From NCBI RefSeq assembly GCF_021869535.1, contig NW_026262712.1:47368001-47432000 (forward strand): DNA of 64,000 bases. Direction: 5' to 3'. Under the pieces are notes generated by a model that saw nothing but the letters and a program-made list of their open reading frames with translations, was not told where the DNA came from and ran no database searches. The position numbers were made by a program, and so were the translations under genes. This DNA is from Mytilus californianus (lineage: Eukaryota). Positions 1,030 through 34,920 of the stretch are shown one piece after another. How positions within the stretch are numbered: the first letter of the stretch is position 1; each line of letters begins with the position of its first letter.

Positions 1030-2030
1030 GTCATATTGATTGATTGAATCTGGAAAAGAGAGGCGAAAGATACCAAAGGGACATTCAAACTCATAAGTCA
1101 AAATAAACTGACAACGCCACGGCTAAAAAAGAAAAAGACCAACAGAAAAACAATAGTAACCAAAACACAACATAGAAAACTGAAGACTGAGCAACACGAA
1201 CCCCACAAAAAACTGGGGGTTATCTCAGGTGCTCCGGAAGGATAAGCATCTCCTGCTCCACATGTGGCACCCGTCGTGTTGCTCATGTTAGAACAAACAG
1301 GTAATGAGTCTTATTCGGTAGGTCACATTCGGGAGAAGGGGACGAGATTTCAGTTACGACATTAGGAACATATCCGCTATCATCTGTAAAACGGATATTC
1401 TGTAACGGTCAACCAACTCGTGATGACGTCCGTAAAATTTACTAAGGGATGATTTCAACTTCACTACTTTGAACTCTTGGTTTATTAGCTTCCTTGTGAG
1501 CAGAAACCCTCTATCAAGGAAATCATGATAGGAAATACAAGCCCTGGAGTATCGTATCAACTGGGAGATATATAGTCCGTATGCAGGCGCTGCTGGAATG
1601 TTGCTACATAAAAATGGAAAGTTCACAATTGGGAAGCTGAAATCATCTCTTTTGTCATAAAGATTTGTTTTCAAACGACCCGCATTGTCAATTTCTAGAT
1701 GTAAGTCAAGATATCAGACAGACTTAACTGTATCTGTTGTATCCTTTATCGCAAGTTTGATGGGATAGATGCGTTCAACAAAGTCACCACATTTTGAATT
1801 ATTTTGTGAGAGAACATCATCTATGTAGCAGAAAGTAAAGTTAAAGGATACTGCTAACTTCTTTTCTTTCTTCCTAAGAAGTTTCTGTATGAAGTCAGCC
1901 TCATATGAATAAAGGAACAAGTCGGCAAGAAAAGGGGCACATTTGGTTCCAATGGGAATGCCGATTGTTTGTTGAAAAACAGGTCCTCCAAACATAACAA
2001 ATTTGTTGTCAATCGTAGTGGCGACAAATG
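1030..2030 (-). mobile_element. 5'-truncated, disrupted retroelement reverse transcriptase fragment (Penelope-like) plus its 3' flank
   Basis: ORFs 1714-1995 and 1354-1674 carry QQTIGIPIGTKCAPFLADLFLYSYE, CYIDDVLS (YxDD) and YDKRDDFSFPIVNFPF...ISQLIRYSRAC. They are broken by a stop/frameshift. The family assignment is from motif recall. Confidence 0.75.
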
Positions 2031-4021
2031 AAAACAGGTCTCCTCATTTAGTATTGTAGGGACTATATAAAGTCATTTATTTAAAAAAAAAAAAATATCA
2101 ACCCCAGTCTGTATGTTAATGTTAGCTGCAAAAACCAACTTTTTCTAGTTACTAGTAAAATACGGAAAAACGAAAAAAAAAATATTTAAAATGTGCTGCT
2201 CTTGACTAAATAAGTTTTAATAATAATCGTTTTTTTCTGTAGCTATAAAAGATATTTATTGCGGGAAATGATTAAGGCTTTAACTTTCTTGCTTGACAAT
2301 AATTTTGTTCGTTATGAAAATGCTTATATCGTCAAATAATCTGAATTCGTAAGAGTACTGACTGAGCACCTCTAAATACAAATCGTTTTCTTTATCGTTA
2401 TTAATGTTCTTTAAAGGAAAATAGTAATACTCGTTGATAAAACCAGAGTTTATGAAATATGCATTTTTATCATTAGCTTGAACACGAGTACATGGACCCC
2501 TCTTTTTTAAAATGACATTTGACTTGATACTGTATGAAGGTTATTTATTCCAATTTTTATGAAAAAATCACCAATGATTTTTTTTTTAAATTAGATAAAT
2601 ATACAGCAAAAAATGCCGGTTTTTTCTAAAATCATGAAAATTTAATAAAAATGAATTATATCCAAAGAATTGTTACACAAATTAAGAAGATACTTTTGTA
2701 AAGAAGATATTCCAAATCGTTTTACAAAAATCCGCATGTATTTATCTTTTGAAACAAAAAAGTTAAGTAGTTCTATCCAAAGAATAGAAATGTCCAAGAA
2801 ACCAACATTTTAGGTAAATGTCTTAAATTTCGACACCATTTATCTCTAAAATTAGCACATGAAGGTATATTTTTCATTACATATTTGAATTGACCAAGTG
2901 AAAAATAGCTTGTATGCAAATTTTCGTAAAAAATTCACCGTGGGATCGAAACTGTATCGTATGCCCTTAAATATAGATTCTACCACTGCAACAAGTGTGA
3001 TACAATTTTTATCAACTCGCGACAGTAAAATATTCAAGTTTAAAACGCGAGGCTCGTCTAGCGTTTTAAATATTTAAAATGTAACTGTCGAGAGCGGATT
3101 ATTATCGTTTTGCACGAGATTTGGTGGTGGAATCTGTTTCTCTAATGATTTTTAGACGATATACAGACAAATTTAATCCTTCTTTTCAAATGATCTGCAA
3201 AAAAGATGTGTTCTTTATATGTGACGTCATCAGGCAGGGTCGCCTTTTTTCATGACGTCACAATGGTAATTTCAAAGAAGAACAAGAAAATTTGACGTCA
3301 TAATCTAATATTGACAATAAAGAACTGAGATTAAACAAACTACACGTTGATTAAATAAAAATAATCAACAGGTCAGGAAAAGGATAAATCGGGTAAGAGA
3401 AATATATTTACAAAAAAAAAAAAAAAAATAAAAACAATATTCAGCTGAATATCATTTCTATTTGTAGTTAATATTATCAATTCTTAGAGATAACGGTATT
3501 GGTACAAAATTGAGATGGCGATGTTCTTCTTGTCGCATTTTCAAAACTATTGTTTTCTGAAATATGTCATAATATAGCTGACTTGACTGAATGTATCCTT
3601 GCGTTAACACAAACAAAACTTTCACAGCGCTTCAGATATCACAGACCTTTGGTCGAAAGTTGTCTCATTGGTAACTATACCACATCTCCTTATTTTTAAA
3701 CTGTAACAAGTTTCCAGCAGTTGCAAGCACATTTTTACGCTGTTTTCAATTATATCTTGCTAAATTGATTACACAACTGTGCAGGTGTTGTATTAAGTTC
3801 TTTAGTTTCACGATAAACAGTCTGGGTATGCAAAACAAGTAGAGGGGGAGGGCAATTAAAACTGGTTTAACCCATCACAGTGTGTGTCTGTACCAAGTCA
3901 GGCTAGCTGACCCTTGTGATGTTCTCTGTTTTTTGTCATTGTTTTTACCTATTATTTGTTCGGGGGAATCGGATGTTTGTGGTATGTGGTGTCTGTCGAA
4001 ATGTCCAATATTTCACTCATT

Positions 4022-5410: not shown

Positions 5411-5913
5411 TCATAACATGTCAAGACAAGTAAATGAATAAATGTCTGCTAAAAAAACCAAAAATGATACATACGTTTTTACATCTATTGTGCAATGTAA
5501 AGCATATAACAGTTGTTCCAACCACATTTCTATATCCTTTGTAGCGTCAATACATTTCATATTAGTACGAACAATGGGAAGAGAACATTCCTCCACCATT
5601 ACCACAACCAATTTTTCAATATCTTCGAAATCTCTAATTGTAGTATGCATTCTGCCTGACTTCTCTGAGAAGGTTACAACAACTGGCGTATGCTTCTCAA
5701 TAAATTGAAAGCTGTTTCCCATTTGGAGACCAAGTAAAAAGTCTCTGCCAATAAGTCCACAATTAAGGTTATATATCTTCTCAAGCATATCCACAACTCT
5801 CTCGACCCACGTTCTTTCAATGTCGACATCAAAATTTACGAACACAGCATCAAATGGTCTTGCGGGTAATTTTGGCCTTTGTTTCGAGTTAACATGATAA
5901 ATGTACGACTCTT
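5411..5913 (-). CDS. TIR-domain exon, probable terminal exon of the minus-strand receptor gene
   Basis: Translation FDAVFVNFD..ERTWVERVVDMLEKIYNLNCGLIGRDFLLG...PVVVTFS matches TIR box 1/box 2 (FDAF, RDF.PG). Strong acceptor ttctctttttgcag|AA GAG TCG in phase 1; TGA at 5411-5413. A possible internal donor (AC|GTATGT) lies near 5475. Confidence 0.75.
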
Positions 5914-6490
5914 CTGCAAAAAGAGAATACACTATACAGTGGATTCAACCTTTGTGCAAAAATATTCGACATAGTTTGTCTACGCTTAACTACAAAAAAA
6001 AAATCCGAAACAATGACACATCAACGAAGATCGCAGCAATTATAATAAATATTGTTCAAGATATCCCCTCGTTTTTGGTTGCTTTTCCATGTTTTGGACT
6101 TTCACCGAACGGGAACGCTTTTTATCATTAGAAGACTATAACAACGAACCTTGGTTTATTTTGTAATGGCTTATTGAATCAAGTACATTTCAAACAGTGT
6201 GCTCCATTGTCTTCATGTCTTAAAGAAGAGAGGTTTACGTGTCAAGTCGTATCTTAACGTTCAGACTGCAGGAATTTGAGAAGGTTGACACCACAAGCAA
6301 CTAATTCCGCTAACGGATAATTTGTCGCGACTTCTCGAGTAAATAATGACTAACCTATCAGTCGTCGTGAATAAGTACACTTGTGTACTCTATTATATAA
6401 AGACAATTAAAAATTAAATCGAAATGAAGTGTTTGTAAAAAAAGTTAGTTTACATTAATCTAAAAAAAGGCTGTCCTATAAAACATGTTT
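5914..6490 (-). pseudogene. Decayed signal-peptide/TM segment directly 5' of the TIR exon (TLR-like remnant)
   Basis: IFIIIAAIFVDVSLFRIFF..VVKRRQ is TM-like with a basic stop-transfer, broken by an upstream TGA and a frameshift in a T10 run. 6236-6300 and 6456-6482 align with 11851-11938. Confidence 0.35.
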
Positions 6491-6794
6491 GATGAAAGTT
6501 AAACGGGGAGAAAGTAAATCAAGATTATAAATTAAACGCATAAAACAGGGAGACAAAAGTTGAAATATAGTCGCATAAGTTTACACTCCTATGCAAGCAC
6601 ATTCATTCAGTCGTACAGTGTATGCAAGTTCACTTTTAAGAGTTTTGGCTTTTTATTTGCAATTATACCATTTCGTTTTAATTTCGTGTAAGGACTTACA
6701 TAATTTGTCTTGATGATAAACTATATTTCTAAACACAACTGAAAGTTCAAATAAATCAGCAGTAGATAATCGAACCATGTTGAAAGCATATTGA

Positions 6795-7445
6795 TAATGC
6801 TCTCCAACTTCGTTCTTTATCTGGCCTTTTTTAAAACGTTTTTGATTCGAGCGTAACTGATGAGTCTTTTGTAAACGAAACGCGCGTCTGGCGTACACAA
6901 GTTTAATCCTGGTATGTATGAGTTTATTAACAACCACTGGGTCGATACGACTACTGGTGGACGTTTCCTCCTTGAGAGTTAAACCAGCCCAGTAGTCAGC
7001 ACTTCTGTGTTGACATGCATCATCATTGATATGGTCATTATTATAAATTACCTGTTCACAAAACTTTGAATATTTCGAAATACTAAGGATTTTCTACCCT
7101 AGGAATAGATTACCATAGCTATTAGGCAAAGCCTTTATGTATTTAAGGTCCTGAATGCCATTCAACTTCGTACTTTTTTGGCCTTTTTATTTTCTTTTAT
7201 TTACAATCACAAATGTTAACAAAACTAAGATCTTGGATACTAGTGATTTGCGACCAAGGAATAGATTACCTCACCTATTTTTGCCAAAACCTTTCGGAAT
7301 TTTGTGTTTTAGATGCTCTTCATATTCGTTCTTTGTTTGACCTTGTTAAATATTTTGATAAGAGCATCAATGATGAGTCTTTGAAGACAGTACGTGCGTC
7401 TGGCGTACAAAATGTTAATCCTGGTATCTATGATGAGTTTGTTAA
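6795..7445 (+). repeat. Head-to-tail copies of a dispersed non-autonomous repeat family
   Basis: Core ...CTGATGAGTCTTTTGTAAACGAAACGCGCGTCTGGCGTAC...AATCCTGGTAT occurs twice here and again at about 42835-43120 (-), 44350-44490, 51780-51865 and 52525-52630 (-). Confidence 0.65.
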
Positions 7446-7664
7446 TATTTCTTTATGCTAAAATAGAATGGGTGTTATATATCTTGCCAACTACATAAAT
7501 GTAAGTGTATTGTAGGCCCATTTCCTTACGTCGTGGGGGTATTTATACATCTGTAGCTTTCGAAGGGTTTGGTTTGAGCGTTCTGATGAAGCTGAATCTG
7601 CCAAAACGCTTAAATGGTTTCATTCAGCATATCCAATTCATTAGAGAATTATTATAAAAATTAC

Positions 7665-7757
7665 CTTCTGGTAGCTGTAAAATTTCATTAGCTTGTGTAC
7701 TTTCCTCTCTGATAACGTTCTCCACCACATGATTATTCATTTGAAGAGCTAACTCGT
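7665..7757 (-). CDS. 93-nt cassette exon copy 1 (DELALQMNNHVVENVIREESTQANEILQLPE)
   Basis: ttgtag|AC...GAAG|gtaatt; phase 1-1; no stop; paralogous to four other copies. Confidence 0.7.
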
Positions 7758-8141
7758 CTACAATTGTAAAGTTGTAATTTTGAATTAACTGGTTGTTGCA
7801 ATGAATCGATATCATAATTGAATAATATGTTTCGATGAGTGATAATCATCATTCAAACTTGAAGAGGATCTGAAAAGTAACGAAGTTGCGATTTTGGCGA
7901 AAAATTAAAGGGATTTTTATACAAACCCCACAATAAAAAAATGATCCCTCCTTTCAGAATTTCGAGCCATCATATTACGGACGGGACAAAAACATTTTAT
8001 CAACCCCAACGTCGTTGCTTAGGGTGTGCCTAAACTATTTATCAATAAGCTGAACAAACCACATTATTTTGAAGCTATTATTGGAAATCAAGAAAATAAA
8101 AGTGAAACAAACAAAGGCTCAAAATCTGTAAACATATTTAC

Positions 8142-8234
8142 CCTCTGATTTCTGTACAATTTCATTAGCGTGAGTACTTTCCTCTTTGATAACGTATTTT
8201 TCACCCTGACTATTCCTATGAGGAGCTAATTCGT
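8142..8234 (-). CDS. 93-nt cassette exon copy 2 (DELAPHRNSQGEKYVIKEESTHANEIVQKSE)
   Basis: tttatag|AC...GAGG|gtaaat; phase 1-1; no stop. Confidence 0.7.
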
Positions 8235-9417
8235 CTATAAATGTAAAATTGTGATTGTGAATTAACTGTTCATAGCAATTTATCAATATCATAACTGTTT
8301 TTTTTTTATAGAAAAAAAACCCCCACTTTTTGATTAAATGTCTCGATGTCATCATCATTCAAACTAGAAGATGATCTGTAAAATAGATAAGTTACTATTT
8401 CGTCGAAGAAAAGGGATATGTATTGAAACCCCACAATCGAAAATATCGCGTTTCGAAAACTTATGTCTAATTAGAGATGCTCGAGTCCAAAATTTTTGAA
8501 AACCGAAACCTTAAAGAAACGTTGCAGAGCTACTATTATAAATAAGACCAAACATATTGCCATACCCGGACAAGAAATCAAAGCTATTTACAAGGGAGAA
8601 ACATTCCGCAATTGAAAATGATTTCCTTAGTGACAACAGCACATTTCAATTGACCATATCTTTGTATTCATGTCATTTATTTTCATCCTCGATTTTGATG
8701 AGTGAAAACTTCATTGAAAATTGAAGAGAATTTGATAAAAAATAAAGGAACTATCAAAATGACTAGAATGCACATGGGATATTGTAACAAGTCCCTCTTC
8801 CTTAATAAATACCCCCAAGCAAAAGGGTCCACCTTTTAACATTTATTTTGTTATGGAATTCATTCAATGTTTTGCTTGATGAGGGGACACCTTTTTACAT
8901 ATTTGAAGAAGGTCTCAGAAAAAATGAAAGCTCAGTTGGCAACAAGAACTAATATGCGATATTTATACCCTCCCACCAATGTATCTCATTCAGATTTTCC
9001 GGTTCATCAAACTCCCACATAGTTTAGGTCAGTTGAAATTTTCATTCAAATTGGATGAGGATAAATAAAAAATGAAAACTTTTCAAGGCGACAAGAATTA
9101 ATAAAGAATACTTTAACAAGTCTCCCTCCTCAAAAATTGTTGGTTTTGCTGGGTGGAAACCTTAATTCCAATTTTAACAGGATCTGGCAATTAATAAAGG
9201 CGCTAGCATGGCAGAAAAAAAGATGAAGAATGACTTAATGATCGAATAGACTTAAGAACGGAACAGCAACTATTACATACCACAACGTCGTTACTTAGCG
9301 TGTAACTAAACTATTCATCTAAGAGCTCAACAAACCACATTGTTTTGAAATTTATTACTGGAGATCAAGAAATTAAAAGTGAAACATACAAATGCTCAAC
9401 ATTTGTTAGCATATTAC

Positions 9418-9510
9418 CCTCTGATTTCTGGTCAATTCCATTAGCTTGTGTACTTTCCTCTCCGATAACGTGTTTTTCTCCATGATTATTCATTTGAAGA
9501 GCTATTTCGT
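9418..9510 (-). CDS. 93-nt cassette exon copy 3 (DEIALQMNNHGEKHVIGEESTQANGIDQKSE)
   Basis: attgcag|AC...GAGG|gtaata; phase 1-1; no stop; too short for the ORF track. Confidence 0.7.
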
Positions 9511-10398
9511 CTGCAATTGTAAAATGTAATTATAAATTAAAGGTTAAAAGCAACTAATCAATATCATAACTAAGATTTATTGATATGGAATTCTAAAATA
9601 ATATAAGTTTTAGATGTTTCGAAGAGTGGATATCATTAAAACTTGAAGATGATCTGAAAAGAAGTTTAGTTACTATTTAGTCTAAAACAAGGGGTATTTA
9701 TACAAACCCCACAATTGAAAAACAAATGGTCCATGATTTCAGATTTTTTGGATTATCGAGTCATCGCATTAAACGGTATTCATTTTACCACTTCAGATAC
9801 ACGGCTTGAAAATGTATGTCTCATCGGAGATGCTCAAGACCACAATTTTGAAAACCAAATCTTATAGAAACGTTATAGAGGTGATGTTATTAAAACGGAT
9901 CAAAAGTATTACCAAATTCTGAACAAGAAATCAAAGCTACACATGAGGGAGATACATCCCTTGTTGCAAATGATTTCTTTAGTTTGCAAATTGCAATAAA
10001 ACAATACCCTTATATTTATTTTTAACCACGGCTTTTATGAGTGGAAACTGCATTGAAAGTTGAGGAGTATTTGATAAAATGAGACAAGAATGTATATGTA
10101 TATGGATTTCCGTGTTATTAAAAAACTCTTCCGTGACTTCGGTAAGTGGAAATTTTCGTTCAATTTGATAAGTATATAAAAACAGAATGACAATCGGATG
10201 GACACCGGACGGACAGAAAACATTTTACCAACCACACTGTCGTTGCTTGGGATTTAACTATATCATTAATCAATTAATTCAACATACCACCTTATTTCAT
10301 CTTGCAATATATAATCAATTTCAAATATACAGACTAGATTGAAAGCAAAGAAATGAAAGTAAAACAATTTAAGGCTCAACATTTGTAAAAATATTTAC

Positions 10399-10491
10399 CT
10401 TCTGATTTCTGTATAATATCATTAGCTTGAGTACTTTCTTTCCCTATAATGTATTTAACTCCCTGATTGTTTATTTGAGGAGCTAATTCTT
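10399..10491 (-). CDS. 93-nt cassette exon copy 4 (EELAPQINNQGVKYIIGKESTQANDIIQKSE)
   Basis: attacag|AA...GAAG|gtaaat; phase 1-1; no stop. Confidence 0.7.
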
Positions 10492-10799
10492 CTGTAATTG
10501 TGAAATTAAAATTGTTTATAACAACTTATCAATGATATAACTGATTTATTTTTCTTATATGGACTTCTAAAAAGACCCATGGGTCAGATGTTTCGATGTA
10601 TGGAAATCATCATTTAAACTTGAAGAGGATTTAAAAAATAGTTCAGTTGCAATTTTGGCGAACAAAAGGGATATTTACTCATACCCAATAATCGTAAAAC
10701 ATTACCCCACATTTCAAACATAACATCCAATGGATTTAGTGTAAAGACGTCATTAACAGCTTATTAAACGGTTTAGGAAAAAGAATGATTTCTTTAGCA

Positions 10800-11940
10800 A
10801 ACGTTCTTCTTATAAAAATTTACATTCCTTACCAGGATAAAATTAATAAACATGTTGTAAAAATGTAAATGTGTAACAAAAGTGGATCTTATATTCATTA
10901 TTCATTTATTGCTTCATAAGCCTCAATCGCAATTTATGGCCAAAATAAAACAGACCATTCGAGCTTTGCTTTATTAAAAAAGCTTAGTGACAACTACGAT
11001 TATCTTTGTGATACAGTTTCCTTTGAATATTATTAAATCTGTTTTTTAGCACTTGTGTAGGTTTGAAGTTACTTGGGATTCTTGTGAAGGAAAGTGGAAA
11101 ATCAAAACGACCAACTTTGTTTTTGGCTGTCAAATTCGATTATCTTATTGATATTATCTGTTGAATATTGCAGTTATCACATATATATGATAAGCAAACA
11201 CATACTCAAGGATATTGACTTAATACGTGTACCCTTTCGTACTTGAGTAATTTTAGGAAACAGAAGTTTAAAATATATAAATCTATTAAGATGATACAAA
11301 TTAAGATCACAAACAAAAGCTGGTTAAAACATGAACCCCCAAAGGAAAGAGACCAATTGTGTCGACAGCGTAAGCGTCCAATGATATGCATGCAACATCC
11401 GCCACGCGATACACTCTTAAGTTGAAATGTCAGAATCGAAGTAATTACAGATGATACGACTGTTGGTATTGAGAATGTCTCAATATTGAGTACATTGGTA
11501 CATAAATAACCCATTATCAGTATTTGCCTTTTAGACGATTTCACATTGTTAAGTAGCTCAGTTATGACATAATGGTTCCTTGTACTTTTCTTACTTAAAT
11601 GTTGACATTGTGAAATTATCAAGTAAATGACGTCTGAGGTGCAGTGATTGGTATTGTAGTCAATGGTTGAAGATTATAGTAGATCATCTATGTTACTTGG
11701 TGTTCGTATAATCCTTAAATGAAAGCCGGCATTTAAGGGGTCGGTATTCCGTTTTCAATGTACTTTCTGAAGATAATGTTGACTTAAGTAACTGTCCAAT
11801 GGGTTGATTCAGTATGTTCTGATGGCTTAATGTCATACACCGGCGAAAGCTACGTGTCAAAACATATTCTCAGTGCTTGAATTCAGGAATTTGAGAACGC
11901 CGACACTACAAAGAATCTATAAAAGGCTGTCCTGTAACGC
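10800..11940 (-). pseudogene. Decayed TLR-like remnant (signal peptide, LRR-like, TM, possible TIR traces)
   Basis: LRR N-cap-like YNLQPLTTIPITAPQT; LRR-like stretch and TM LLFVILICIILIDLYIL in ORF 11206-11622; KIIVVVTKLF resembles TIR betaC. Many stops and frameshifts. DNA homology to 6236-6482. Confidence 0.3.
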
Positions 11941-12330
11941 CAATTTAGAAAAAAAAGATATTTCGGGTACACATTACATTTCAATCAGCTACTTAAAGCA
12001 TAAAATGGGATGACAATGTATTATTATATTCACTGCAATACATGCTCCTATAAAAGCACTCTTGGTGAATCGTAAAGAGTGTAAATATGTCCTTTCTTTG
12101 TTTTTTAGTTTGTACTCTCAACATACCTGAATATGTTTCTGTTTTGTGTGTAAGGACAATTATCGTTTGTATTTCTTAAATGAATTTAGATTTCGAAGAT
12201 ATTATCAAACCTGTTGCAGTCATTTTATGTATCTTTATGCTTACAAAATACAACTATGGAGGTTGTACATCTGGCCGAATCTGTTTGTGTTTTCATCATA
12301 TATTCATGATGGATTTAAGAAAATATTTAC

Positions 12331-12423
12331 CTTCTGATTCTTGTACAATTTTGTTAGTCTGATCATTTTCCATTCCGATAACGTGCTTCTCGACCTGAGT
12401 ATGAATTTCTGGACCCGTCGCAA
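12331..12423 (-). CDS. 93-nt cassette exon copy 5, most divergent (VATGPEIHTQVEKHVIGMENDQTNKIVQESE)
   Basis: gttacag|TT...GAAG|gtaaat; phase 1-1; no stop. Confidence 0.65.
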
Positions 12424-13179
12424 CTGTAACAGTTAAATTGTAATTATAAATGAACTATTCATAGTAACTCATCAATATTAAGATCGCTACTTTTGGATAG
12501 CTTTGGTCTTTTTAAATTTTCAGACACGTTTTTTGTCATAGATGTTGTATTTGAGCCACAAAGTCAAATACATTGATTTCATCTTGTTTCGAGAAAACAT
12601 GAATTGACATATTACAAGTCTGTCATTTCTTAACTTAGAACAGTCCCAAATTTTTCATTAAAATACAGAACTTTACTTCTCTGAGTTATCATAATACTTA
12701 ATTAAACTTCTGTAAATCACAAAAAGACTTGTTTATGTCTCAGATCTAGGTTCCAGAGGTGTCTGATCACAAAATAACCGACCTATAAATATAATTCTAT
12801 TTATTTATTTATGATCACCATACATTGTAACTTTGATACTATTTTTTTAAAGATGAATTAAATTATTTCGTTTTATCTCCTGGTTGAGTTTTGTGACAGA
12901 ATTACTCTGAATTTCAGGCTTTAAATATGAATACTGGTTAATAAGAAAGGAAGAAGTGATTTTTTTTGTATATTGTTCTAGTATGTTAAACTATATTTGC
13001 AGTTGGGAACTATTTGCAAATTAAAGTAATTTTCGAATGCACATAAAAACCCAATACCAACTATACTTGGAAGCTATTTGCAAAGTAATGTCAGAATCAA
13101 GGTGAGAACCAAATATCACCTATTCCTCGAAACTACAGGAACGTACTGTCAGAATCACTATAAGAACCAAAGATAAACA

Positions 13180-13400
13180 ATATTTAATATGGTCTTTTAC
13201 AAGTTAGAGGTTTCGCTAGCTATAAAACCAGGTTTAATCCACCATCTTCTACATAAGGAAATGCCTGTACCAAGCCAGGAATATGACAGTTGTTTTCCAT
13301 TTGTTTTATGTGTTTGAGCTTTTGATTTTGCCATTTGATAAAGGACTTTCCGTTTTGAATTTCCTTGGAGTTCGGTATGTTTGTTATTTTACTTTTTACA
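13180..13400. repeat. Dispersed repeat insertion
   Basis: AAACCAGGTTTAATCCACCAT...AAATGCCTGTACCAAG..AGGAATATGACAGTTG, recognised as a common interspersed family; partial similarity at about 3860-3900. Confidence 0.5.
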
Positions 13401-13637
13401 ACACTCGAAGATATTTTGAAAAAAAAAGAAATGTTATAAAATCTATTAAGAGATGTTTTTAATTATTTTCTTGCTCTCTGTTGTGAATTTTGCTTCATAA
13501 ATATACTGCAATATCTTCATTGATTTAAGAATAATAAGCGGAAGAGAATTGCTTATTTCGGAAGTCATATTAGCACATGTGAGTTGTGTGAAATGCTCTT
13601 GCATGTCCCACATCTGTAACCTCATTCGACAACTGAC

Positions 13638-13709
13638 CATTACGACAACTTGAAACATTTCTATCATTTGGGATTTGTTGTTCATCTTTATGCCAGTCAG
13701 TAGCAGTTT
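13638..13709 (-). CDS. Candidate 72-nt phase 1-1 cytoplasmic exon (ETATDWHKDEQQIPNDRNVSSCRN)
   Basis: actttag|AA...AATG|gtcagt, open frame. It overlaps the TLR-like remnant, so it may be fortuitous. Confidence 0.3.
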
Positions 13710-15726
13710 CTAAAGTCTGTTATGGATAAAAGGATATGTATTTTAAGTTCACTAATACAATAACAAAAAACAAAACAGAAATAATACATATACGTTAGTC
13801 GAAATCAACTGTGACAGTTGGGAATTGGGTTTATAGGGTTTACATGTATAATATGGTGTTTCGCTGTTTTACAAACTCATCATCAATCACCATGATTAAA
13901 ATTATTTACATCAGGTAATTGGTTTACAAATCAAACATAAACTTAATCCTAACAAGCTTCCAGGAAATGATACATTTTGATTTATTTTTACCCTAATTAT
14001 GACTTGATAACTATTAAATATTTTTCGCAAATGTTTCTAAGAATAGAAATGGGAACAATCTAATGCCTGACAGTTTTAAACATATATCCGATTTTAGGAT
14101 TGGAGAATTGCTACATTTTGAATTATGCTTGATAAATCTTCTAAATTCAATCTACCATATGGAAATAAACGTTTATAAAACCCTCTAAAGATTACTTATC
14201 TGACGGAAAAAATGATCAATCAAATTTTTCATATTTTATAAGCGTAGCATGTATGAGTAAAATGATATGCAGAATATATATAAAAGAGACAATTACCCAA
14301 CAACTTAAAAAACTCAAACATGTATTAAAGAATATGTAGTCACAGTTGGAAAAAAGTGGAAAATATCCTGATACTTCTCGTTTGTATTTAAGATATGATA
14401 GGTAACACTGTTTGCTTGTGAGCGTTTTATTTTGAAAAAAATACATATTTCATTATGTAGTGTTGTTAAGTAGGATTTGCCAAACGCAGTTATCATTGTT
14501 GAAAGGCAAATCAATATTTTTTAAAGTACACCAGCAAATCTGCTTATTAGCCATTGTCAAAATTGATTCATTGGGTCTTACAGATATGACAACTGTCTTA
14601 TACTCAAGGTCTACGTTGAACCTCAAATCAAATATATCATAAAATAATAAAAGATTGGCTCATGCAGATTTGATAAAATGTTAGGCCGAAGGCAATTTTC
14701 ATTTACAATGTCACAACGATGCATGAAAGTCCTTTTGTAGAATATATAGATTGGTTAATTGTTGCTTGCTGAATATCCAATGGTAAATATTTTATGCATA
14801 TTAAGGACGAAAACATATTAATGATCAATACAATAGGTAGGTTATACACAAGAAGGTAGGAAATTTGAACCGTCACTGGTTACTGAAGGTATGTTTGATA
14901 TTTCCAGAATTTCCAGTTCCAACTGGGCGAAGCTGCTGATTTATTTATCCAGCAGTACGGAGACTCTACTTTAACTAGAGGTTTGAATAAGTCTATGGAT
15001 AACCGCTATTCCTAGACTAGTTGGGTAATATACTATATAAATAACACATAGCTGAGAGGATGATAGAGCAAATTGTTACCCCGAGAAAATATTGTCAACT
15101 GAGGCAAAGCCAAGGTTGACAATTTCTTTTCGAGAGGTAACAAACTGCTTTATTACCCTCTCAGATATGTTTTATTTAATTTATTATACAGAATGTTCTG
15201 TTATAACTGTCTATTAAATTTTAAATTCAAAGCAATAAACTATGACGTCTTGTACATAACAACCATCCGTATTTAATAAAGCGCACAAGTAATCAAGCGT
15301 CTCCGTGAAGGGTAACAGAATATTTGCCATGGGATAGAGTAATTGATCTCCCTCGTATTAACCAATTAAAATCTGGCATTTTGATATAAAGTATACTAAA
15401 ATGTATTAGTCTTTCTGAGGGACATGTCGACACGAGGATGAATGTTTAGTAAGGTATTGTCCTCGGAATAGTAATGCAGTCGAACAGTTTATTTCATCTG
15501 GTGATTCGGGATGAGATGCTCTGAGTATACTCCTTTATGTACTCAAAATTAGAAATTAGAGTAGAGAATACAGCGTACACGAAACTATGCCAAAACAACA
15601 GTACACAAAACACAACATAGCAAACTAAAAGACTGAGCAACACGAACACTACCAAAAAAAGCAAAAACCAGGGGTGATATCAGGTACTCCGGAAGGGAAG
15701 GCAGATTCTGCTACACAAAAGTCGAC

Positions 15727-15816
15727 CATTTCAACTTTGTAGACCCTTGCAAGGCTGTTAGATGTTGAAACATATAGGTTTAGCCTCTTCGCGTTTGTGA
15801 AGATCTAACGTCATAT
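15727..15816 (-). pseudogene. Dead duplicate of the 16072-16161 exon
   Basis: Same 90-nt length; MTLDLHKREEAKPICFNI*QPCKGLQS*N versus MKPVLHRQEEATPLCSNISQSREDLQSLK; two stops; acceptor AG lost. Confidence 0.65.
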
Positions 15817-16071
15817 CATCAGCAATAAGTTGAGCATTAACCACTCAATTATAAAACATTTGCCATATTCACAGGAAAACAAACGCTGTATCCGCTTTCC
15901 CACCATGTTAAAGGATTACATTGTAACTGTTTTGTATAATATAGTATCACTTTGTATTTTGTAAATTAGCATAATTAGGACTGATTCTCAGTTGTTTCGT
16001 TGTTTTTTGCAGCACCAATACAGACAAATAATATTATAAACTAAGACATACATTGTTAGCTTTGAATTTAC

Positions 16072-16161
16072 CTTTTAAACTTTGTAGATCTTCTCTAGAC
16101 TGAGAGATGTTGGAACATAACGGTGTAGCCTCTTCTTGCCTGTGAAGAACTGGTTTCATAT
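16072..16161 (-). CDS. Juxtamembrane cytoplasmic exon (MKPVLHRQEEATPLCSNISQSREDLQSLK)
   Basis: ttattgcag|AT...AAAG|gtaaat; 90 nt; phase 1-1. Confidence 0.7.
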
Positions 16162-17614: not shown

Positions 17615-17704
17615 TGTGCTTGGTCCTTGATTTCTTGCACACAACAATCACTGCAACCACAGTTATAAAAACTATCACAAGTAGACAAATTCCTATCAAC
17701 GGTC
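17615..17704 (-). CDS. Transmembrane exon (GPLIGICLLVIVFITVVAVIVVCKKSRTKH)
   Basis: tttttgttttccag|GA...CACA|gtaaga; 90 nt; phase 1-1; ~21 hydrophobic residues followed by KKSRTK. Confidence 0.8.

Positions 17705-19737: not shown

Positions 19738-19791
<54 letters not shown>
19738..19791. repeat. (GTA)18 microsatellite
   Basis: Perfect trinucleotide run read directly. Confidence 0.95.
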
Positions 19792-21351: not shown

Positions 21352-21441
21352 CTGTAAAATCTTTTCCAGCATAGTCTTTTGTCTTATTACTATTTTCAGA
21401 TGAATTCTTCTTATTTGTTTTTGTTTCTTTAGAGTGAACGT
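21352..21441 (-). CDS. Extracellular stalk exon (DVHSKETKTNKKNSSENSNKTKDYAGKDFT)
   Basis: ttccattattag|AC...ACAG|gtagac; 90 nt; phase 1-1; polar with NSS and NKT sequons. Confidence 0.65.
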
Positions 21442-22454: not shown

Positions 22455-22745
22455 CTGTTCCATCGTAAAATAAGGTTGCATATTTTGAAAACCATGACGT
22501 TACAGTTCTGTCCACAAACATCATATCGCATGAAAAATTTACAGTTTCTCTGGTATTTTTTAGATGAAATGAACGGGAAAACTCGTTTCCAGATGGACTA
22601 CATGAGCAAATTTCAGGATTGCACTCTCCTGCTTGATGTGTACATTTGCCTGTTGTAGAATTCAGCGTTAAGCTGTCTTCTGATCTATCATTGATAAGGA
22701 ACTCAACATTCTTTCCATAAGGTGCTCTACAGGCAAAACATCTCA
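22455..22745 (-). CDS. Ectodomain exon D2, Cys-rich Ig-like/beta domain
   Basis: gtcacag|TG AGA TGT...ACAG|gtaaga; 291 nt; phase 1-1; VRCFACRAPYGKNVEFLIN...CNPEICSCSP...NFSCDM; 7 Cys; NST and NFS sequons. Confidence 0.85.
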
Positions 22746-24779
22746 CTGTGACTTTAGAAATATTAACCTCGCCTGTGATATATATATCTGTAGATCCTAT
22801 AAAACCTATAAAACAGGTAAAGTGAGATATTTATAAGGAATACAGAATAAGTGATGGTACCCCAGTGATATAATCTCATTTGTCCCTTTAAACAGATACA
22901 ATAATTCCTACATCTTTTTCATCACACGGAGGCAAAACATTACGATATTAAAGACAATACAATAGTCTTAGTTTATATCTATCATCAGACCACAAAGACG
23001 AAAGGACAAAGTGCATGATTACTTTTGTTTTCATATTCTAGTAAATCATTATTATTATTATTATTTACAGTGCTTATATAGCGCTTATCTTAATAAACAT
23101 TTAAAAATCATCGTCCCGTTTTGTTAGAAATATACACATGTGTGTAGCGTATACGCATCACAGTTGGAAAGCTTCAAAAGAAACAAACTGCTGTCAACTG
23201 CAGAAACTTAATCGAAAAAAAACAATCGTTTTCGATATTTGATTGCCATTCTACAAAGCTATTACATAATGATTTAAAAAGAGACAAATATGTGAAGAGC
23301 ATGGTAAAAAAAAACCATGTCAACGTACTGATTCTTGGTATCAATTTAGTCTTAAAAGTTATCAATTAAACACTGCAGTAAGATCTTAAACGGTTATTTC
23401 ATTAATTTTTTTTATGAAATAAATATGAATTGCGAACTGCTGGAAACACTTATGATATTTTATCCTTTTCTCAGAATGTTTATGACCTTTTTACACTTAA
23501 ACTGTGGCATGTGTACTGATTGATATTCTAGTCGAATAAAACATGATTTATGAATAAGTTGTAATAGGCTTTAAACTAGCTTTCAGTTACTGGAAACAAT
23601 TTAAGAACGGTTCGGTGCGTCATTTGCTTTTTGGTAGTTGTTTTTGTTTGTGAGTGGTTGTTGTCTGACGAGGCACGCTCTTTATACCTGCTTTTTACAG
23701 GTTGTGCTTTTGATTTTCAAATACACCACTGACCAAGTTTGGGAATGTTGAGCGCTCATAGATATGTTTAATTACATCAACTTAATTGCTTACGTGACCA
23801 AAGCAAGGAGCTTGTAATTCAGTTGTAGTTGTTAGTTGCTGTATGCAATTTTTGTTCCATAGTTTTTAAAAAAATAAGGCCGTTTGTGTTCTAGTTTGAA
23901 ATGACTTACATTTTGATTGCTATACATTATGGGGTCTGCTCTTTGATGAGGACCGCATTGTTACCTTATAGTACATTACATCTACGTCCTTCGGTCTCTG
24001 GAGGATATTTGTCTCATTGAAATCATATTCCATCTTCTTTTTAATTGCTAGTTTGGTTGAGGAATCACATATCCCATACGATATATCTGATGGAACCAAG
24101 TGTTAAAAAGAATCACGAGGAAGTGAAAAGTAAATTTAACTTTTATGACAAAACAATTCAGTAATTTGAACTTAGACAACCAAACGTATAATCAAGTTTC
24201 CCACCAACACAGAATTAAAAAAAAATGTATATACATGTTTCCTATTAGAACCAAGATAATAAGGAACATTTCAAAAACACACTTTCATTTTTTATGTCTA
24301 TCAATTTGAATTTTTTTTTATATCAGCTGGTGATAAAAGTCTTCATAGAAAATACATTTGTTCCAGATTATTCAATCAAATCACTATTTCATAAATAACC
24401 TATATTCTATATAACAGATACCAAAAATGAAAATACCAAATAAAAGTTACCGTTTTATAGCAATCCTCTGTTCAGTTTTTTGTCACACTGCTCACACATT
24501 TTATATTACAAACGTAAAGATAACATAAACAAAATGGTATCAATGCATTTATCAGTAAATATATTCCATATAAATGTTTTCCCTAGAAAAATTTCGTAAG
24601 TGTGACACTTGTCTTTGAATATCAACCAATTTATGATATAACAATCAATATCTTCTTCATATAGCAGAAGTTGATGTGCCAATAACAGAATAACAACTGT
24701 GATGATTTAAATATCATAGCTACCACACAATGTTTTTGATGTCAGAAATCTGACACGTATTCATCCTCGAGATACTAAA

Positions 24780-25330
24780 ATGACATAGAAGTTTACAACT
24801 ATAGGTCACCATACGGCCTTCAAAAATGAGTAAAACCCATACCGCACAGTCAGCTATAAAAGTCCCCGAACTAAGAAATGTGAAACAATTCAAACGAAAA
24901 AATAACGGCCTGATTTATGTACAAAACAATGTACGAAAAACAAATATGATATACAGACTTAATCGACAACCACTGAGTAAAAGGCTCCTGACTTGGGACA
25001 GGCACATACAGAATGTGGCGGGGATAAACTAGTTTTTTTGGCGCAAAACCCTCCCCCAAACCTTGGACAGTGGTGTAACAGTACAACATAAGAACTATAA
25101 AAATAAGTTGAAAAAGGCTGAACTCATCAGACCGATACAAAGAAGAAAAACATCTAACAAAAACACAGACCGCACGTGGCAGGGTATTTATACATCCCAC
25201 AACAAAAAAGAAACTAAGTACAGATCTAGGAGTACTCACAGTTACTGACAGCTATTTCATAGCCATTTACAACTAATAAAAAAATCATGCATCTAAGACT
25301 TAAATATCAATCAGTACACATCCAACATCC
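24780..25330 (+). repeat. Dispersed repeat (ACAACTATAGGTCACC..ACGGCCTTCAA..ATGAG family)
   Basis: Same core as 33050-33240 and 35920-36200; inverted relatives at about 23700-24040 and 36300-36440. Confidence 0.65.
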
Positions 25331-25379
25331 AATTTTTCAAATGTTGTGTTCATCTTTGTAATCGATATAACTGAGTTTG

Positions 25380-25720
25380 TTTACGGATTGGTTTGTTTGT
25401 AGGCATGTCAACTGTGTCTGCTGTTCCTGTGTGCGCTCGATGTTGTACCTAAATACTCGTTCAAAACAAAAACACTAATATCCTTTGTACAACATGTTGC
25501 ATCCTGTCGATTGTGAATGCAATCTCTTTATATTGATGTTTTTTTCATATTTGGATACCTTGAGGTTTTTTGGTTTTATTCACACTCCGGCTAGACTTAT
25601 TTTGTTTTTAGCCGATGAGAGGAATTGTTGCAAACAGTATCTTATCTCAGGCTTTAATAGGGTTTTGTGCTTGTTATTGTTGTAAAAACGGTGGAGTACG
25701 GGCATGTAAGATTCCTATGC
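25380..25720 (-). pseudogene. Possible decayed duplicate of ectodomain exon D1
   Basis: With a frameshift, NINI-KEIAFTID resembles D1 NINRNEIIFTIED; RNLTC upstream; multiple stops. Confidence 0.25.
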
Positions 25721-26538: not shown

Positions 26539-26868
26539 CATTTGTTAATGAAACAGTTGTGCTAAATGTCTTGCCTCCTTGTGAAATATACCATGTTCCG
26601 TCCACGTCCTTACTCTTAACGTCTTCTATCGTGAATATGATCTCGTTCCTGTTTATGTTTGGATTGATCACTCCAAACATTGGTATATGGTGACAATGAT
26701 ATGTCGTCTTTTCGAAACTGCACATTGTTTCGTTTCCATTGTTATCTTTTAAAGATACTGGTTTTAAAAAATCATCAGTTCTATAGATTAGATTCAAGTC
26801 ATCTTGAATGACGTCCCAGGTGATGCAGTTGAAAGCAACGGCCTTGCAAACTAACCATGCTAAATAAA
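26539..26868 (-). CDS. Signal-peptide C-terminal part plus ectodomain D1 (Ig-like) exon
   Basis: cactttcag|TT TAT TTA...AATG|gtaagg; 330 nt; phase 1-1; VYLAWLVCKAVAFNCITWDV...EIIFTIEDVKSKDVDGTWY; no stop; NET sequon. Confidence 0.8.
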
Positions 26869-27235: not shown

Positions 27236-27247
27236 ACACATATCAAC

Positions 27248-33240: not shown

Positions 33241-34920
33241 AGTTTGTGACAAGCAGTTATTCGTTTGACAAAGCATTATTGCACATGTAAAACAATAAAA
33301 GTTCCTCTTATGGGTAAATGTGATTTTTTAACGAATTTTGAAAGAATCAAAATCAACCTTTTACGAACAATACAAATATTACTATTATTATAAAACTTCA
33401 AATATCATATCAACCGAGACTTATGCCGTACTGAAAACATCCTGGTCTTGCTTGTAGAATTCTTTGTAAAATTAATAACAATATTCGTTGATATTTTTGC
33501 TAGATAGACAGTATTGAAAAAAATATCAGAAAGCGTGCTTATTTTTCCAATCTTCAAAGAAGCATTGCATGTTCAAAGGTGTTAGCATGTTTAAGTGCCT
33601 TGAATGTTCGATACACAATGGAGATATTAAAACCCATGAAAAATATATTAATGCACTGGTAAGCACAGGTCAGATAATACGACGGAATGTGACATACAAT
33701 CGTTATTGGTGCATACTAGTAAAAAAATTCTGAAAATGTTAGCAATATCTCTAAAAGATATAATAAAAGTCAAACACAAGCCCATTCCTTTTTGGGCAAA
33801 CTATTCAATAACATAATTATTTTCTACTTAGAAAATGTATTTTTCGACATATTAGAGAACAAGAACATATGCGCTTACAGAAAAGCGCTTCGGATACGCG
33901 AAACTATTGCAATACTATGTTCTTTAATGCAGTTTTTGTAAGTTTTCTATTGATAGATTTGCCTACCATTGTCAACATAGTAAAATTGTGTCATTTAAAG
34001 AATGTGTTATCACTTTTTAAAATGTACCAGATTGTTTTCAATAGTTGTATTTCTAATACTTACTTGAAAATAGAATCAATATGGGAATGCTCCTCTCAAA
34101 TATCATATTCTTAGCCTGAAATGAAAATGTAATGGTTAAATCAGGTAAATATAACATTTTAAGAAATATAAAATGATGATGAAGAAAATAAGAATAAGGC
34201 CATGAAATTCATTATTCCAGCACGTTATTGAATTTAAAGCAAGACAAAAGAGCAACAGGAAATATCTATAATGTAAGGTCAAAGATAAAAGGGACTTAGC
34301 TTTATTATACATGTTTATGAATATAAATACCAATTTCCCGACAGCCCATGGTAATGCATGGACGCCAGTTATCAATCATAAAAAAATAAATTATTGTTTT
34401 ATAACAGCAGTTTAGGTGTCAGACCACTAATTCACCCACTCCAATTTAGAACGTATGTAAAAATAGCCCTTCCCTGACAAAAAATAGTGCTTTTGATGTC
34501 ATTGTTTACTTAAACTAACCAACAAATTTATAGAAATCAGAAATATATGTAGACCATTTTGAGCCAAAATTTACTTGTCAATGAGTTTGCATTAAACATT
34601 GAGGATTAATGCGCTCCATAGTATATTTATTTAAGATTTCCAAAAAAGGGGTTATCTTTAGCAGTACTTGTCTTCCGAACGTTAGTATATCCTTACAAGA
34701 CTTTAAACATAGGTTGAAAATTGGCATGTAGAAAGATGATACATGTCCAATTCAGGATATACCTGGTTTCTACGACGTTAAACTTAAGGTTTAATATTTA
34801 GAAAGCTGTGAAATTTGAAAAATTTGATTGAATAGATAGGGATTTTGAATTGGTGGTCTGACACCAGGTTACGGAAGCGTATTAGCGCCATACAAACTTT
34901 TCATTTATATTTCTTTCTAT

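What the first reader, a model, noticed from the sequence alone, without database searches (positions are those of the whole stretch)
7665..12423. Array of five paralogous, frame-neutral 93-nt cytoplasmic cassette exons
Seen: five copies, each exactly 93 nt, phase 1-1 and stop-free, with intact splice sites despite clear amino-acid divergence (consensus about xELAxQxNxQGEKxVIxEESTQANxIxQKSE). Duplicated intron flanks show tandem exon duplication. Inference: length and frame conservation imply selection. Any subset could be included or skipped, giving a tunable spacer or multivalent docking tail between the membrane and the TIR domain.
Basis: partly seen in the sequence, partly recalled or inferred. 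Interest (0 to 1): 0.75.

Follow-up and report, generated by a model that had tools for sequence, protein, structure and literature searches.

The report
Five duplicated exons, spliced together
Five tandemly duplicated 93-base exons of a mussel receptor gene are real and are all spliced together into one mRNA, giving an acidic 155-residue repeat linker between the membrane and a divergent TIR signalling domain; this is ordinary repeat growth by exon duplication, with no sign so far of pick-and-mix splicing.

Summary
On the minus strand, five units at 7665-7757, 8142-8234, 9418-9510, 10399-10491 and 12331-12423 are each 93 nt, AG/GT-bounded, phase 1-1 and open in one frame. Their intron flanks are homologous.

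They are true exons. Transcript contigs from three runs join all five, in order, at exactly these borders. Reads from a recorded RNA run show two of the same junctions.

The gene has 12 exons and every intron is phase 1. It encodes a signal peptide, two possibly Ig-like ectodomain exons, a stalk, a membrane helix, a juxtamembrane exon, the five cassettes and a divergent TIR domain. The TIR exon has no Pfam hit, but it matches TIR_2-bearing proteins at E 1.7e-7 and folds like a TIR.

The annotated Mytilus coruscus relative has four intact 93-nt cassettes. More distant relatives have units of 102, 66 and 42 nt, all multiples of three. No decayed copy was found, whereas a duplicate of the neighbouring exon is dead in both species.

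Selection on length and frame is supported. Amino-acid constraint is weak (pN/pS about 0.6).

Mutually exclusive splicing is refuted. Subset skipping was not seen, but read depth was about 1x. One hint remains: the M. coruscus models skip or truncate the first cassette.

The scan has not found this elsewhere.

The parts
12331..12423 (-). Cassette exon c5. First in the transcript and the most divergent copy (57-63% nt identity to the others). 93 nt, phase 1-1.
   Evidence: AG/GT borders and single open frame. Joined to c4 in the contigs of X1-X3 and in 2 raw RNA reads of X6. Lies in a segment of about 3.6 kb (14508-10885) that has no counterpart in the M. coruscus locus.
10399..10491 (-). Cassette exon c4, 93 nt, phase 1-1.
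   Evidence: Junctions 10491>12331 and 9510>10399 are present in the contigs of X1-X3.
9418..9510 (-). Cassette exon c3, 93 nt, phase 1-1.
   Evidence: Junctions are present in the contigs of X1-X3.
8142..8234 (-). Cassette exon c2, 93 nt, phase 1-1.
   Evidence: Junctions are present in the contigs of X1-X3. Junction 7757>8142 is also seen in 2 raw RNA reads of X6.
7665..7757 (-). Cassette exon c1, last of the array, 93 nt, phase 1-1.
5411..5913 (-). Exon for the divergent TIR domain. Acceptor tttttgcag|AAGAG, phase 1. The open frame runs to the stop codon at 5413-5411. A conserved GTATGT donor after 5475 may instead splice to a further exon, as in the M. coruscus model.
   Evidence: Sequence. 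No Pfam hit. phmmer gives E 1.7e-7 and 3.5e-5 to proteins whose matched parts are Pfam TIR_2 domains. AF2 model has pLDDT 77.9, and its top Foldseek hits in the PDB are all TIR domains. Donor comparison.
16072..16161 (-). Juxtamembrane exon, 90 nt, phase 1-1. Inferred by homology to M. coruscus CAC5360199.1.
   Evidence: tblastn; splice sites. The 182 nt that contig X1 carries upstream of c5 equals 90 + 90 + 2.
15722..15817 (-). Decayed tandem duplicate of the juxtamembrane exon, with two in-frame stops. It serves as an internal control for neutral decay.
   Evidence: tblastn. The M. coruscus locus has the same pseudo-exon with a stop at the same place, at L016:24152-24247.
17615..17704 (-). 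Transmembrane exon, 90 nt, phase 1-1. It encodes a hydrophobic stretch followed by KKSRTKH.
   Evidence: Sequence and translation; homology to P0015 residues 267-298.
21352..21441 (-). Extracellular stalk exon, 90 nt, phase 1-1, rich in K, N and S.
22455..22805 (-). Second ectodomain exon, 351 nt, phase 1-1, cysteine-rich and possibly Ig-like.
   Evidence: 91% identical to P0015 residues 122-238. No Pfam hit. The Atlas structure look-alikes are Ig-like at TM 0.51-0.53, which is a lead only.
26539..26868 (-). First ectodomain exon, 330 nt, phase 1-1. It also carries the end of the signal peptide.
   Evidence: 84% identical to P0015 residues 7-122.
34064..34115 (-). Exon with the start codon and the beginning of the signal peptide (MIFERSIPILILFS). 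An LTR-type retroelement lies in the intron that follows it.
   Evidence: tblastn; sequence.

Best explanation
The five units are constitutively co-spliced coding exons. They arose by tandem duplication of a unit made of one exon plus its intron, inside a mussel-lineage receptor gene. The gene encodes a signal peptide, two ectodomain modules, a stalk, a membrane helix, a juxtamembrane segment, 5 x 31 residues of repeat, and a divergent TIR domain.

Every intron of the gene is phase 1, so a duplicated 93-nt exon is frame-neutral and is simply added to the mRNA. Together the five exons encode an acidic 155-residue linker rich in Q, N, S and T and probably disordered. This linker holds the TIR domain about 190 residues from the membrane.

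Linker length changes through gain and loss of genomic copies between species and paralogues, not through regulated exon choice, as far as the data show.

Shown: the exons, their exact splicing, co-inclusion of all five, the gene architecture, TIR homology, the copy-number difference from M. coruscus, constraint on frame and length, and weak purifying selection.

Inferred: that the repeats act as a flexible spacer or tether, possibly carrying a repeated short motif (the conserved STQAN-I-Q core and the acidic S-E-D/E-E at repeat joints), and that their number matters for TIR signalling.
For: - Exact 93-nt AG/GT phase 1-1 units.
- Contigs of 1679, 1518 and 2480 nt in runs X1-X3 lay all five exons end to end, with introns reading CT..AC on the + strand, i.e. 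GT..AG on the minus strand. RNA run X6 shows junctions 7757>8142 and 10492>12333. In X6, reads on the exons have their first mate only on the + strand, as expected for a minus-strand RNA in a stranded library.
- No retrocopy: the genome holds only these five copies.
- Gene model from M. coruscus CAC5360199.1. All 11 introns are phase 1.
- The M. coruscus locus has four intact 93-nt cassettes with the same splice-site motifs. No decayed copy in either locus. The exon-6 duplicate is dead in both species.
- Relatives carry cassettes of 102, 66 and 42 nt, all multiples of 3.
- Pooled pN/pS is 0.62, and 30 of 36 pairs are below 1. Third codon positions are the most variable.
- Each cassette has net charge -1 to -6. 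Eight of nine fall on the disordered side of a charge-hydropathy plot.
- A distant relative, P0010, also has a long E/K-rich stretch of about 250 residues between the membrane helix and the TIR-like domain.
Against: - No experiment bears on function.
- Exon nucleotide identity (61-84%) is about the same as in the alignable intron blocks (70-80%), and two pairwise dN/dS values are near 1. Amino-acid constraint is therefore weak, and the repeats could be nearly neutral filler.
- The contigs come from one study and two samples, and contigs hide minor isoforms.
- In the M. coruscus annotation, one model skips the first cassette and another uses only its last 45 nt. This may reflect real alternative splicing.
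- Disorder is judged only from composition.
Confidence: 0.6

Rival explanations
1. One reading: the five exons are alternative cassettes. Because each is frame-neutral, cells include different subsets, giving receptor isoforms with tails of 0 to 5 repeats, i.e. a spacer tuned by splicing.
For: - All exons are symmetric phase 1-1, so any subset would stay in frame.
- The two annotated M. coruscus products differ only at the first cassette. P0006 skips it and P0015 uses its last 45 nt, although a full 93-nt exon with canonical sites is present.
- X6 had zero reads on c3 at about 1x depth. With so few reads this is uninformative.
Against: - All three transcript contigs contain all five exons in order, and no skipping junction was listed in any of four runs.
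- The M. coruscus difference may be a gene-prediction artefact.
Confidence: 0.15
2. Mutually exclusive exons of the Dscam or sodium-channel type: only one of the five homologous exons enters each mRNA.
For: Tandemly duplicated homologous exons of equal length are the usual substrate of mutually exclusive splicing (PMC9013439, read).
Against: Contigs in three runs carry all five exons in one molecule, and raw RNA reads join neighbouring cassettes directly.
Confidence: 0.01
3. Nearly neutral filler. The duplicates persist only because a copy that loses frame or gains a stop would destroy the downstream TIR domain. Selection then acts on 'do no harm', not on the repeat sequence or the copy number.
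For: - Exon and intron nucleotide divergence are similar.
- pN/pS is about 0.6, with some pairs near 1.
- Copy number and unit length vary freely among relatives: 5, 4, and units of 102, 66 and 42 nt.
Against: - Third positions are clearly more variable than first and second (entropy 0.74 against 0.47).
- A core motif (I15, E18, N23, I25, Q27, E30) is invariant in the five copies here.
- A broken copy could be tolerated through loss of its splice sites, yet no such dead copy exists in either species.
- A long acidic linker is kept even in a relative only 39% identical.
Confidence: 0.2

Closest known systems
Mytilus coruscus CAC5360199.1 and CAC5360201.1 (UniProt A0A6J8A2T2 and A0A6J8A2B6, 'TIR domain-containing protein')
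   Same: Same gene architecture and exon order. The ectodomain exons are 84-91% identical, and the pseudo-exon next to the juxtamembrane exon is the same. It also has 93-nt phase 1-1 cassettes with the same splice-site motifs.
   Different: Four genomic cassettes instead of five, and the annotated proteins show only 3 or 3.5 of them. There is no counterpart of c5. The TIR exon is only 66% identical and lies 13 kb, not 1.75 kb, from the last cassette.
Tandem exon duplication in animal genes (Letunic, Copley and Bork 2002, as cited in PMC9013439)
   Same: Adjacent homologous exons of equal length arise by duplication of a unit of exon plus intron. About 10% of animal genes are reported to carry such duplicates.
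   Different: That literature stresses mutually exclusive use. Here the copies are all included together and lengthen the protein.
One-repeat-per-exon elastic or spacer regions such as the titin PEVK exons (from my own knowledge, not tested here)
   Same: Short symmetric exons each encode one repeat of about 28-31 residues that is charged and disordered. Repeat number sets the length of a linker.
   Different: PEVK length is set by extensive regulated exon skipping, for which there is no evidence here. The sequences are unrelated and the protein context is different.
IL-1 receptor family, including IL1RAPL1 and IL1RAPL2
   Same: Single-pass receptor with a cytoplasmic TIR domain. The best sequence-profile and structure matches of the TIR exon in the PDB are the IL1RAPL2, IL-1RAcP and IL1RAPL1 TIR domains. 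The ectodomain is possibly Ig-like.
   Different: No Pfam Ig or TIR hit. The BB-loop reads RDFLLG, not RDxxPG. A linker of about 190 residues lies between membrane and TIR, where IL-1R-type receptors have a short one (the last point is from my own knowledge).
Mutually exclusive exon clusters (Dscam, sodium-channel exon 5)
   Same: Arrays of tandemly duplicated homologous exons of equal length.
   Different: One and only one exon is chosen there. Here all are co-included.

Membership tests
Tandem exon duplication array | Adjacent exons homologous to one another | tested here: met
   61-84% nt identity between the five copies. Profile E-values are 1e-15 to 1e-17 for each copy.
Tandem exon duplication array | Homology extends into the flanking introns, so the duplicated unit is exon plus intron | tested here: met
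   Repeat families D1-D5 are shared by 3-5 units. Intron blastn blocks are 70-80% identical.
Tandem exon duplication array | The copies are used as exons | tested here: met
   Exact junctions in the transcript contigs of X1-X3 and in RNA reads of X6.
Mutually exclusive exon cluster | Exactly one exon of the cluster per mRNA | tested here: not met
   All five exons are in the same contig in three runs.
Alternative cassette (skipped) exons | Transcripts both with and without the exon | tested here: inconclusive
   No skipping junction was listed, but raw depth was about 1x and contigs drop rare forms. The M. coruscus models differ at the first cassette.
TIR domain (Pfam PF01582 / PF13676) | Match to the Pfam model above its gathering score | tested here: not met
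   No Pfam family even at E 10 for the window exon. None either for the M. coruscus protein or P0010.
TIR domain (Pfam PF01582 / PF13676) | Significant sequence homology to bona fide TIR domains | tested here: met
   phmmer over 1.84 billion proteins gives E 1.7e-7 (P0011) and 3.5e-5 (P0012). The matched parts coincide with their TIR_2 domains. Own-genome paralogues L003 and L004 are TIR_2. A family-only profile hits the IL1RAPL2 TIR at E 0.009.
TIR domain (Pfam PF01582 / PF13676) | Flavodoxin-like TIR fold | tested here: met
   AF2 model with pLDDT 77.9 and pTM 0.73. The top Foldseek hits in the PDB are all TIR domains (prob 1.0, best E 2.5e-3, TM up to 0.59/0.75). Caveats: the input alignment included true TIR sequences, and no hit reached E 0.001.
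TIR domain (Pfam PF01582 / PF13676) | Box 2 / BB-loop RDxxPG with the conserved proline | tested here: not met
   The window has GRDFLLG, with leucine in place of proline.
Toll-like receptor | Leucine-rich-repeat ectodomain | tested here: not met
   No LRR or any other Pfam hit on the ectodomain exons or on the full M. coruscus protein.
IL-1R-like receptor | Immunoglobulin-like ectodomain modules | tested here: inconclusive
   No Pfam Ig hit. The Atlas structure look-alikes are Ig-like at TM 0.51-0.53, but the Atlas model is poor (pLDDT 0.54).

The most novel reading that the evidence does not exclude
The array is a length-variable tether used at two levels. Copy number differs between individuals and species, as with other presence/absence variation in mussels. 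In addition, individual cassettes are skipped in particular tissues or after infection, as the two M. coruscus models hint. The distance or valency between membrane and TIR domain, and hence signalling strength, would then be tuned much as titin PEVK length is tuned. That would be a new way to modulate a TIR receptor.
Probability: 0.12. Interest if true: 0.55.

Novelty: new member of a known kind. Interest (0 to 1): 0.3.

Why it matters
This is a clean, RNA-verified case of a protein linker growing by tandem duplication of a symmetric exon. It sits in a lineage-restricted immune-type receptor family: only 12 relatives were found among 1.84 billion representative proteins.

It shows that the existing M. 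coruscus gene models under-count the cassettes. It also shows that this family's TIR domain escapes Pfam.

If copy number or splicing of the linker turned out to modulate TIR signalling, it would be a useful natural series (4, 5 and shorter units) for asking how tether length affects TIR assembly. As it stands, the mechanism of origin and the mode of use are ordinary.

Tried and rejected
- **Pfam scans.** Scans of the TIR exon and both ectodomain exons gave nothing.
- **First AlphaFold run.** With a 7-sequence alignment it gave pLDDT 44.5 and was unusable. The second run, with 15 sequences, worked.
- **Copy phylogeny.** An ML tree of the nine cassettes plus flanks was unresolved: no starred fork, 6 of 7 inner branches open. 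No one-to-one orthology or order of duplication can be claimed.
- **Decayed or extra cassettes.** I looked with a protein HMM on six-frame translations and with nhmmer, in the window, in the M. coruscus locus and in the whole assembly. None were found.
- **A cassette-related 'ORF' between c1 and the TIR exon (7093-6656).** Rejected. That stretch is a high-copy repeat, with depths in the hundreds to thousands and reads that run on into unlike sequence.
- **P0006 look-up by exact sequence.** It failed because only the longest product of a gene is on record. P0015 gave the locus.
- **Literature.** Searches for a described mussel Ig-TM-TIR receptor with such a linker found nothing specific.
- **Joined spliced model.** Only exon lengths and phases were summed, and exons were searched one by one by reference.
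Full report
**1. The observation**

The window is AT-rich eukaryotic DNA (about 31% GC). It comes from a 1.65-Gb assembly of 175 contigs.

The five units lie on the minus strand at 7665-7757, 8142-8234, 9418-9510, 10399-10491 and 12331-12423.
- Each is exactly 93 nt.
- Each is preceded by a ...(t/c)ag acceptor and followed by a gtaa donor.
- Each is open in only one frame, the one that puts both flanking introns in phase 1.

The peptide consensus is ELAPQxNNQGEKxVIGEESTQANxIxQKSE, with six invariant columns.

The copies are 61-84% identical in the exon. Copy c5 at 12331 is the outlier.

Homology continues into the introns on both sides. Repeat families D1-D5 are shared by three to five units. 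Intron-against-intron blastn blocks are 70-80% identical.

The flanks are full of indels. The exons have kept their length.

I also placed the observed number of substitutions at random on the consensus. All five copies stayed stop-free in only about 0.5% of trials.

A profile of the five peptides, searched over the whole assembly in six frames, finds these five places and nothing else credible.

**2. They are real exons and are used together**

I laid one recorded RNA run (X6, raw reads) and three contig sets (X1-X3, two samples of one study) on 6470-12469. This gave the decisive result.

- One contig in each of X1 (1679 nt), X2 (1518 nt) and X3 (2480 nt) carries the five units end to end, in genomic order.
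- The junctions are 7757>8142, 8234>9418, 9510>10399 and 10491>12331.
- The skipped DNA reads CT..AC on the + strand, i.e. GT..AG on the minus strand.
- In X2 and X3 the last junction is laid one or two bases differently, with one unlike letter between. Its length is the same.
- X6 shows junctions 7757>8142 and 10492>12333, with two reads each.
- In X6, reads on the exons have their first mate only on the + strand. This is what a stranded library gives for a minus-strand RNA.

The assembly has no second copy of the cassettes. A processed retrocopy therefore does not explain the joined form.

No junction that skips a cassette was listed in any run. Two limits apply. X6 depth on these exons was only about 1x, because 6% of the run was read. 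Contigs also drop rare variants.

Co-inclusion of all five is thus the observed state, and mutually exclusive use is refuted. Minor skipping isoforms are neither shown nor excluded.

**3. The gene**

A search of the last open frame (5913-5414) against 1.84 billion representative proteins returned only 12 relatives.

One is a 570-residue Mytilus coruscus protein, CAC5360201.1. Its 585-residue sister product is CAC5360199.1. UniProt names both 'TIR domain-containing protein'.

tblastn of the 585-residue product onto the window maps a 12-exon gene on the minus strand:

| Exon | Coordinates | Length |
|---|---|---|
| Start codon and signal peptide | 34115-34064 | 52 nt |
| Ectodomain 1 | 26868-26539 | 330 nt |
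| Ectodomain 2 | 22805-22455 | 351 nt |
| Stalk | 21441-21352 | 90 nt |
| Membrane helix | 17704-17615 | 90 nt |
| Juxtamembrane | 16161-16072 | 90 nt |
| Five cassettes | 12423-7665 | 93 nt each |
| TIR | 5913-5411 | 503 nt |

All borders are AG/GT and all eleven introns are phase 1. The summed coding length gives 653 residues.

The exons upstream of c5 are placed by homology only. Their lengths fit the transcript contigs:
- X1 has 182 nt upstream of c5, which equals 90 + 90 + 2.
- X3 has 959 nt upstream, against 951 nt for the five exons between exon 1 and c5.

Exons were handled one by one by reference, and only lengths and phases were summed.

The 3' end is open. The frame runs to a stop at 5413-5411. 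However, a GTATGT donor after 5475 is conserved with M. coruscus, whose model splices there to a last exon that supplies little more than the stop. An earlier follow-up note on this window (s1-340078) also calls this exon the second-to-last coding exon. I did not have reads on that stretch.

**4. Is it a TIR domain?**

Pfam gives no hit, even at E 10, for the window exon. It gives none for the M. coruscus protein or the more distant P0010 either. Three independent lines still support a divergent TIR domain.

- *Sequence.* phmmer E-values of 1.7e-7 and 3.5e-5, for the whole 1.84-billion library, go to P0011 and P0012. Their matched segments coincide with their Pfam TIR_2 domains. The weak paralogues in the same genome (L003, L004) are TIR_2 as well.
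- *Profile.* A profile of the family alone, with no canonical TIR in it, has the TIR domains of IL1RAPL2, IL-1RAcP and IL1RAPL1 among its few PDB hits (IL1RAPL2 E 0.009, the others about 0.5).
- *Fold.* An AlphaFold model from a 15-sequence alignment has pLDDT 77.9 and alternating strands and helices. Its nine best Foldseek matches in the PDB are TIR domains (IL1RAPL, Hydra TRR-2, MyD88, TLR5, IL1RAPL2, TLR15), and TIR domains dominate the rest of the list. Probability is 1.0, but the best E is only 2.5e-3. The alignment also contained true TIR sequences, which may have steered the model.

The box-1 strand FDAVFVNF and the final W are in place. The BB loop reads RDFLLG instead of RDxxPG.

The ectodomain has no Pfam hit. 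Atlas structure look-alikes are Ig-like at TM 0.51-0.53 on a poor model, which is only a lead. There is no LRR, so it is not a Toll-like receptor.

**5. Comparison with relatives: selection on frame and length**

The M. coruscus locus (L016) is collinear with the window from the membrane exon to the pseudo-exon, at 79-88% nucleotide identity.

It holds four cassettes, at 32465-32557, 34255-34347, 38262-38354 and 39409-39501. Each is 93 nt, open, and bounded by gcag|...|gtaaata.

Neither locus has any decayed cassette detectable by a protein HMM or by nhmmer. All nine detectable copies are intact.

The tandem duplicate of the juxtamembrane exon gives a contrast. It lies at window 15817-15722 and L016:24152-24247. 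It is dead in both species, with a stop at the same position, so it has been decaying since before the two species split. This shows what an unused duplicate looks like in this very gene.

Genomic contigs of more distant relatives carry cassette-like exons of other lengths: 102 nt (L006), 66 nt, and a 42-nt fragment without an AG (L017). All are multiples of three.

Pooled over the 36 pairs of the nine copies, pN/pS is 0.62, and 30 pairs are below 1. Third codon positions have entropy 0.74, against 0.47 for first and second positions (five-copy values).

Length, frame and splice sites are therefore clearly constrained. The amino-acid sequence is only weakly constrained, as is usual for a linker.

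A tree of the copies is unresolved. Identities between species (72-84%) equal those within species, so neither orthology nor the order of duplications can be given.

Copy c5 lies in a segment of about 3.6 kb (14508-10885) that is absent from the M. coruscus locus. This accounts for the 5-versus-4 difference.

**6. How it most likely works**

Every intron is phase 1, so a duplicated symmetric exon is spliced in without any cost to the frame. The array adds 155 residues between the juxtamembrane segment and the TIR domain.

Each cassette is acidic (net charge -1 to -6) and rich in Q, N, S, T and E, with a proline and glycines. Eight of the nine fall on the disordered side of a charge-hydropathy plot.

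A relative only 39% identical in the TIR region (P0010, from a transcript contig) also has about 250 E/K-rich residues between its membrane helix and TIR-like domain. A long charged tether thus looks like a family trait, while its sequence is free to vary.

My best reading (confidence 0.6) is a constitutively included, flexible acidic spacer whose length is changed by genomic gain and loss of units.

The conserved STQAN-I-Q core and the S-E-(D/E)-E at most repeat joints could be repeated docking or phosphorylation sites. That is inference from sequence alone.

Rival readings are regulated subset skipping (0.15), nearly neutral filler kept only because damage would kill the TIR exon downstream (0.2), and mutually exclusive use (refuted). 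One hint for skipping remains. The two M. coruscus products differ only at the first cassette: one skips it and one uses its last 45 nt, although the full exon has canonical sites. This may equally be a prediction artefact.

**7. Known or new**

Tandem exon duplication is common. About 10% of animal genes are reported to carry such duplicates (Letunic et al. 2002, as cited in PMC9013439). Growth of repeat regions one exon at a time is a familiar pattern; titin PEVK is the closest functional analogy, from my own knowledge.

The gene itself is already annotated in M. coruscus. I found no description of the cassette array or of this receptor family in the searchable literature.

I rate it a new member of a known kind, with interest 0.3. 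The attractive part of the interpretation, combinatorial use, is not supported by the RNA seen so far.

Noticed in passing
window 15722-15817 (minus); L016:24152-24247: A tandem duplicate of the 90-nt juxtamembrane exon is a pseudo-exon with in-frame stops. The M. coruscus locus has the same dead copy with a stop at the same position, so it predates the split of the two species.
   Followed up: partly
L016:32465-32557 (M. coruscus CACVKT020000551.1): The M. coruscus gene models under-use the first cassette. A full 93-nt open exon with canonical cag|..|gtaaata borders exists, but CAC5360199.1 includes only its last 45 nt and CAC5360201.1 skips it. This is either alternative splicing or an annotation error.
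   Followed up: partly
window 5411-5913 compared with 22455-26868: Conservation against the M. coruscus protein is mosaic. The ectodomain exons are 84-91% identical, but the TIR exon is only 66% (72% at DNA level, where orthologous introns are 79-88%). The TIR exon also lies 13 kb from the last cassette in M. coruscus, against 1.75 kb here. The TIR end may evolve fast or may have been exchanged with a paralogue; P0001 from another run is 73% identical.
   Followed up: partly
window 27170-30325 (+ strand), GC-rich to about 32000: An LTR-type retroelement sits inside intron 1 of the receptor gene, on the opposite strand. It has a gag-like ORF (PNMA hit) and a 603-residue pol ORF (RVT_1, E 6e-35).
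   Followed up: partly
window 6840-7120, 7397-7440, 10722-10760: Short high-copy repeat pieces have RNA and contig depth in the hundreds to thousands. Nearly all reads run on into unlike sequence, so the reads come from other copies of an abundant, transcribed mussel repeat. 6868-6921 and 7380-7433 are 81% identical copies.
   Followed up: no
window 10885-14508: A segment of about 3.6 kb containing cassette c5 has no counterpart in the M. coruscus locus. There the two flanks are adjacent (L016:29477-29920). Part of the segment (13220-13400) matches a repeat elsewhere in L016 at 86%.
   Followed up: partly
window 1357-2043 (minus): Reverse-transcriptase fragment (weak RVT_1 hit, E 7e-4) in two adjacent open frames. 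Probably a decayed non-LTR or Penelope-like element.
   Followed up: no
window 19738-19791; 49335-49821; 54122-54563: A perfect (GTA)18 microsatellite in an intron of the receptor gene. Further along are a 242-nt x 2 tandem repeat (94% matches) and a 114-nt x 3.9 tandem repeat (80% matches).
   Followed up: no
L017:340-405 and 628-669; L006:1162-1263: Paralogues or orthologues in other sequencing runs carry cassette-like exons of 66 and 102 nt, plus a 42-nt remnant lacking an AG acceptor. All are multiples of three.
   Followed up: partly
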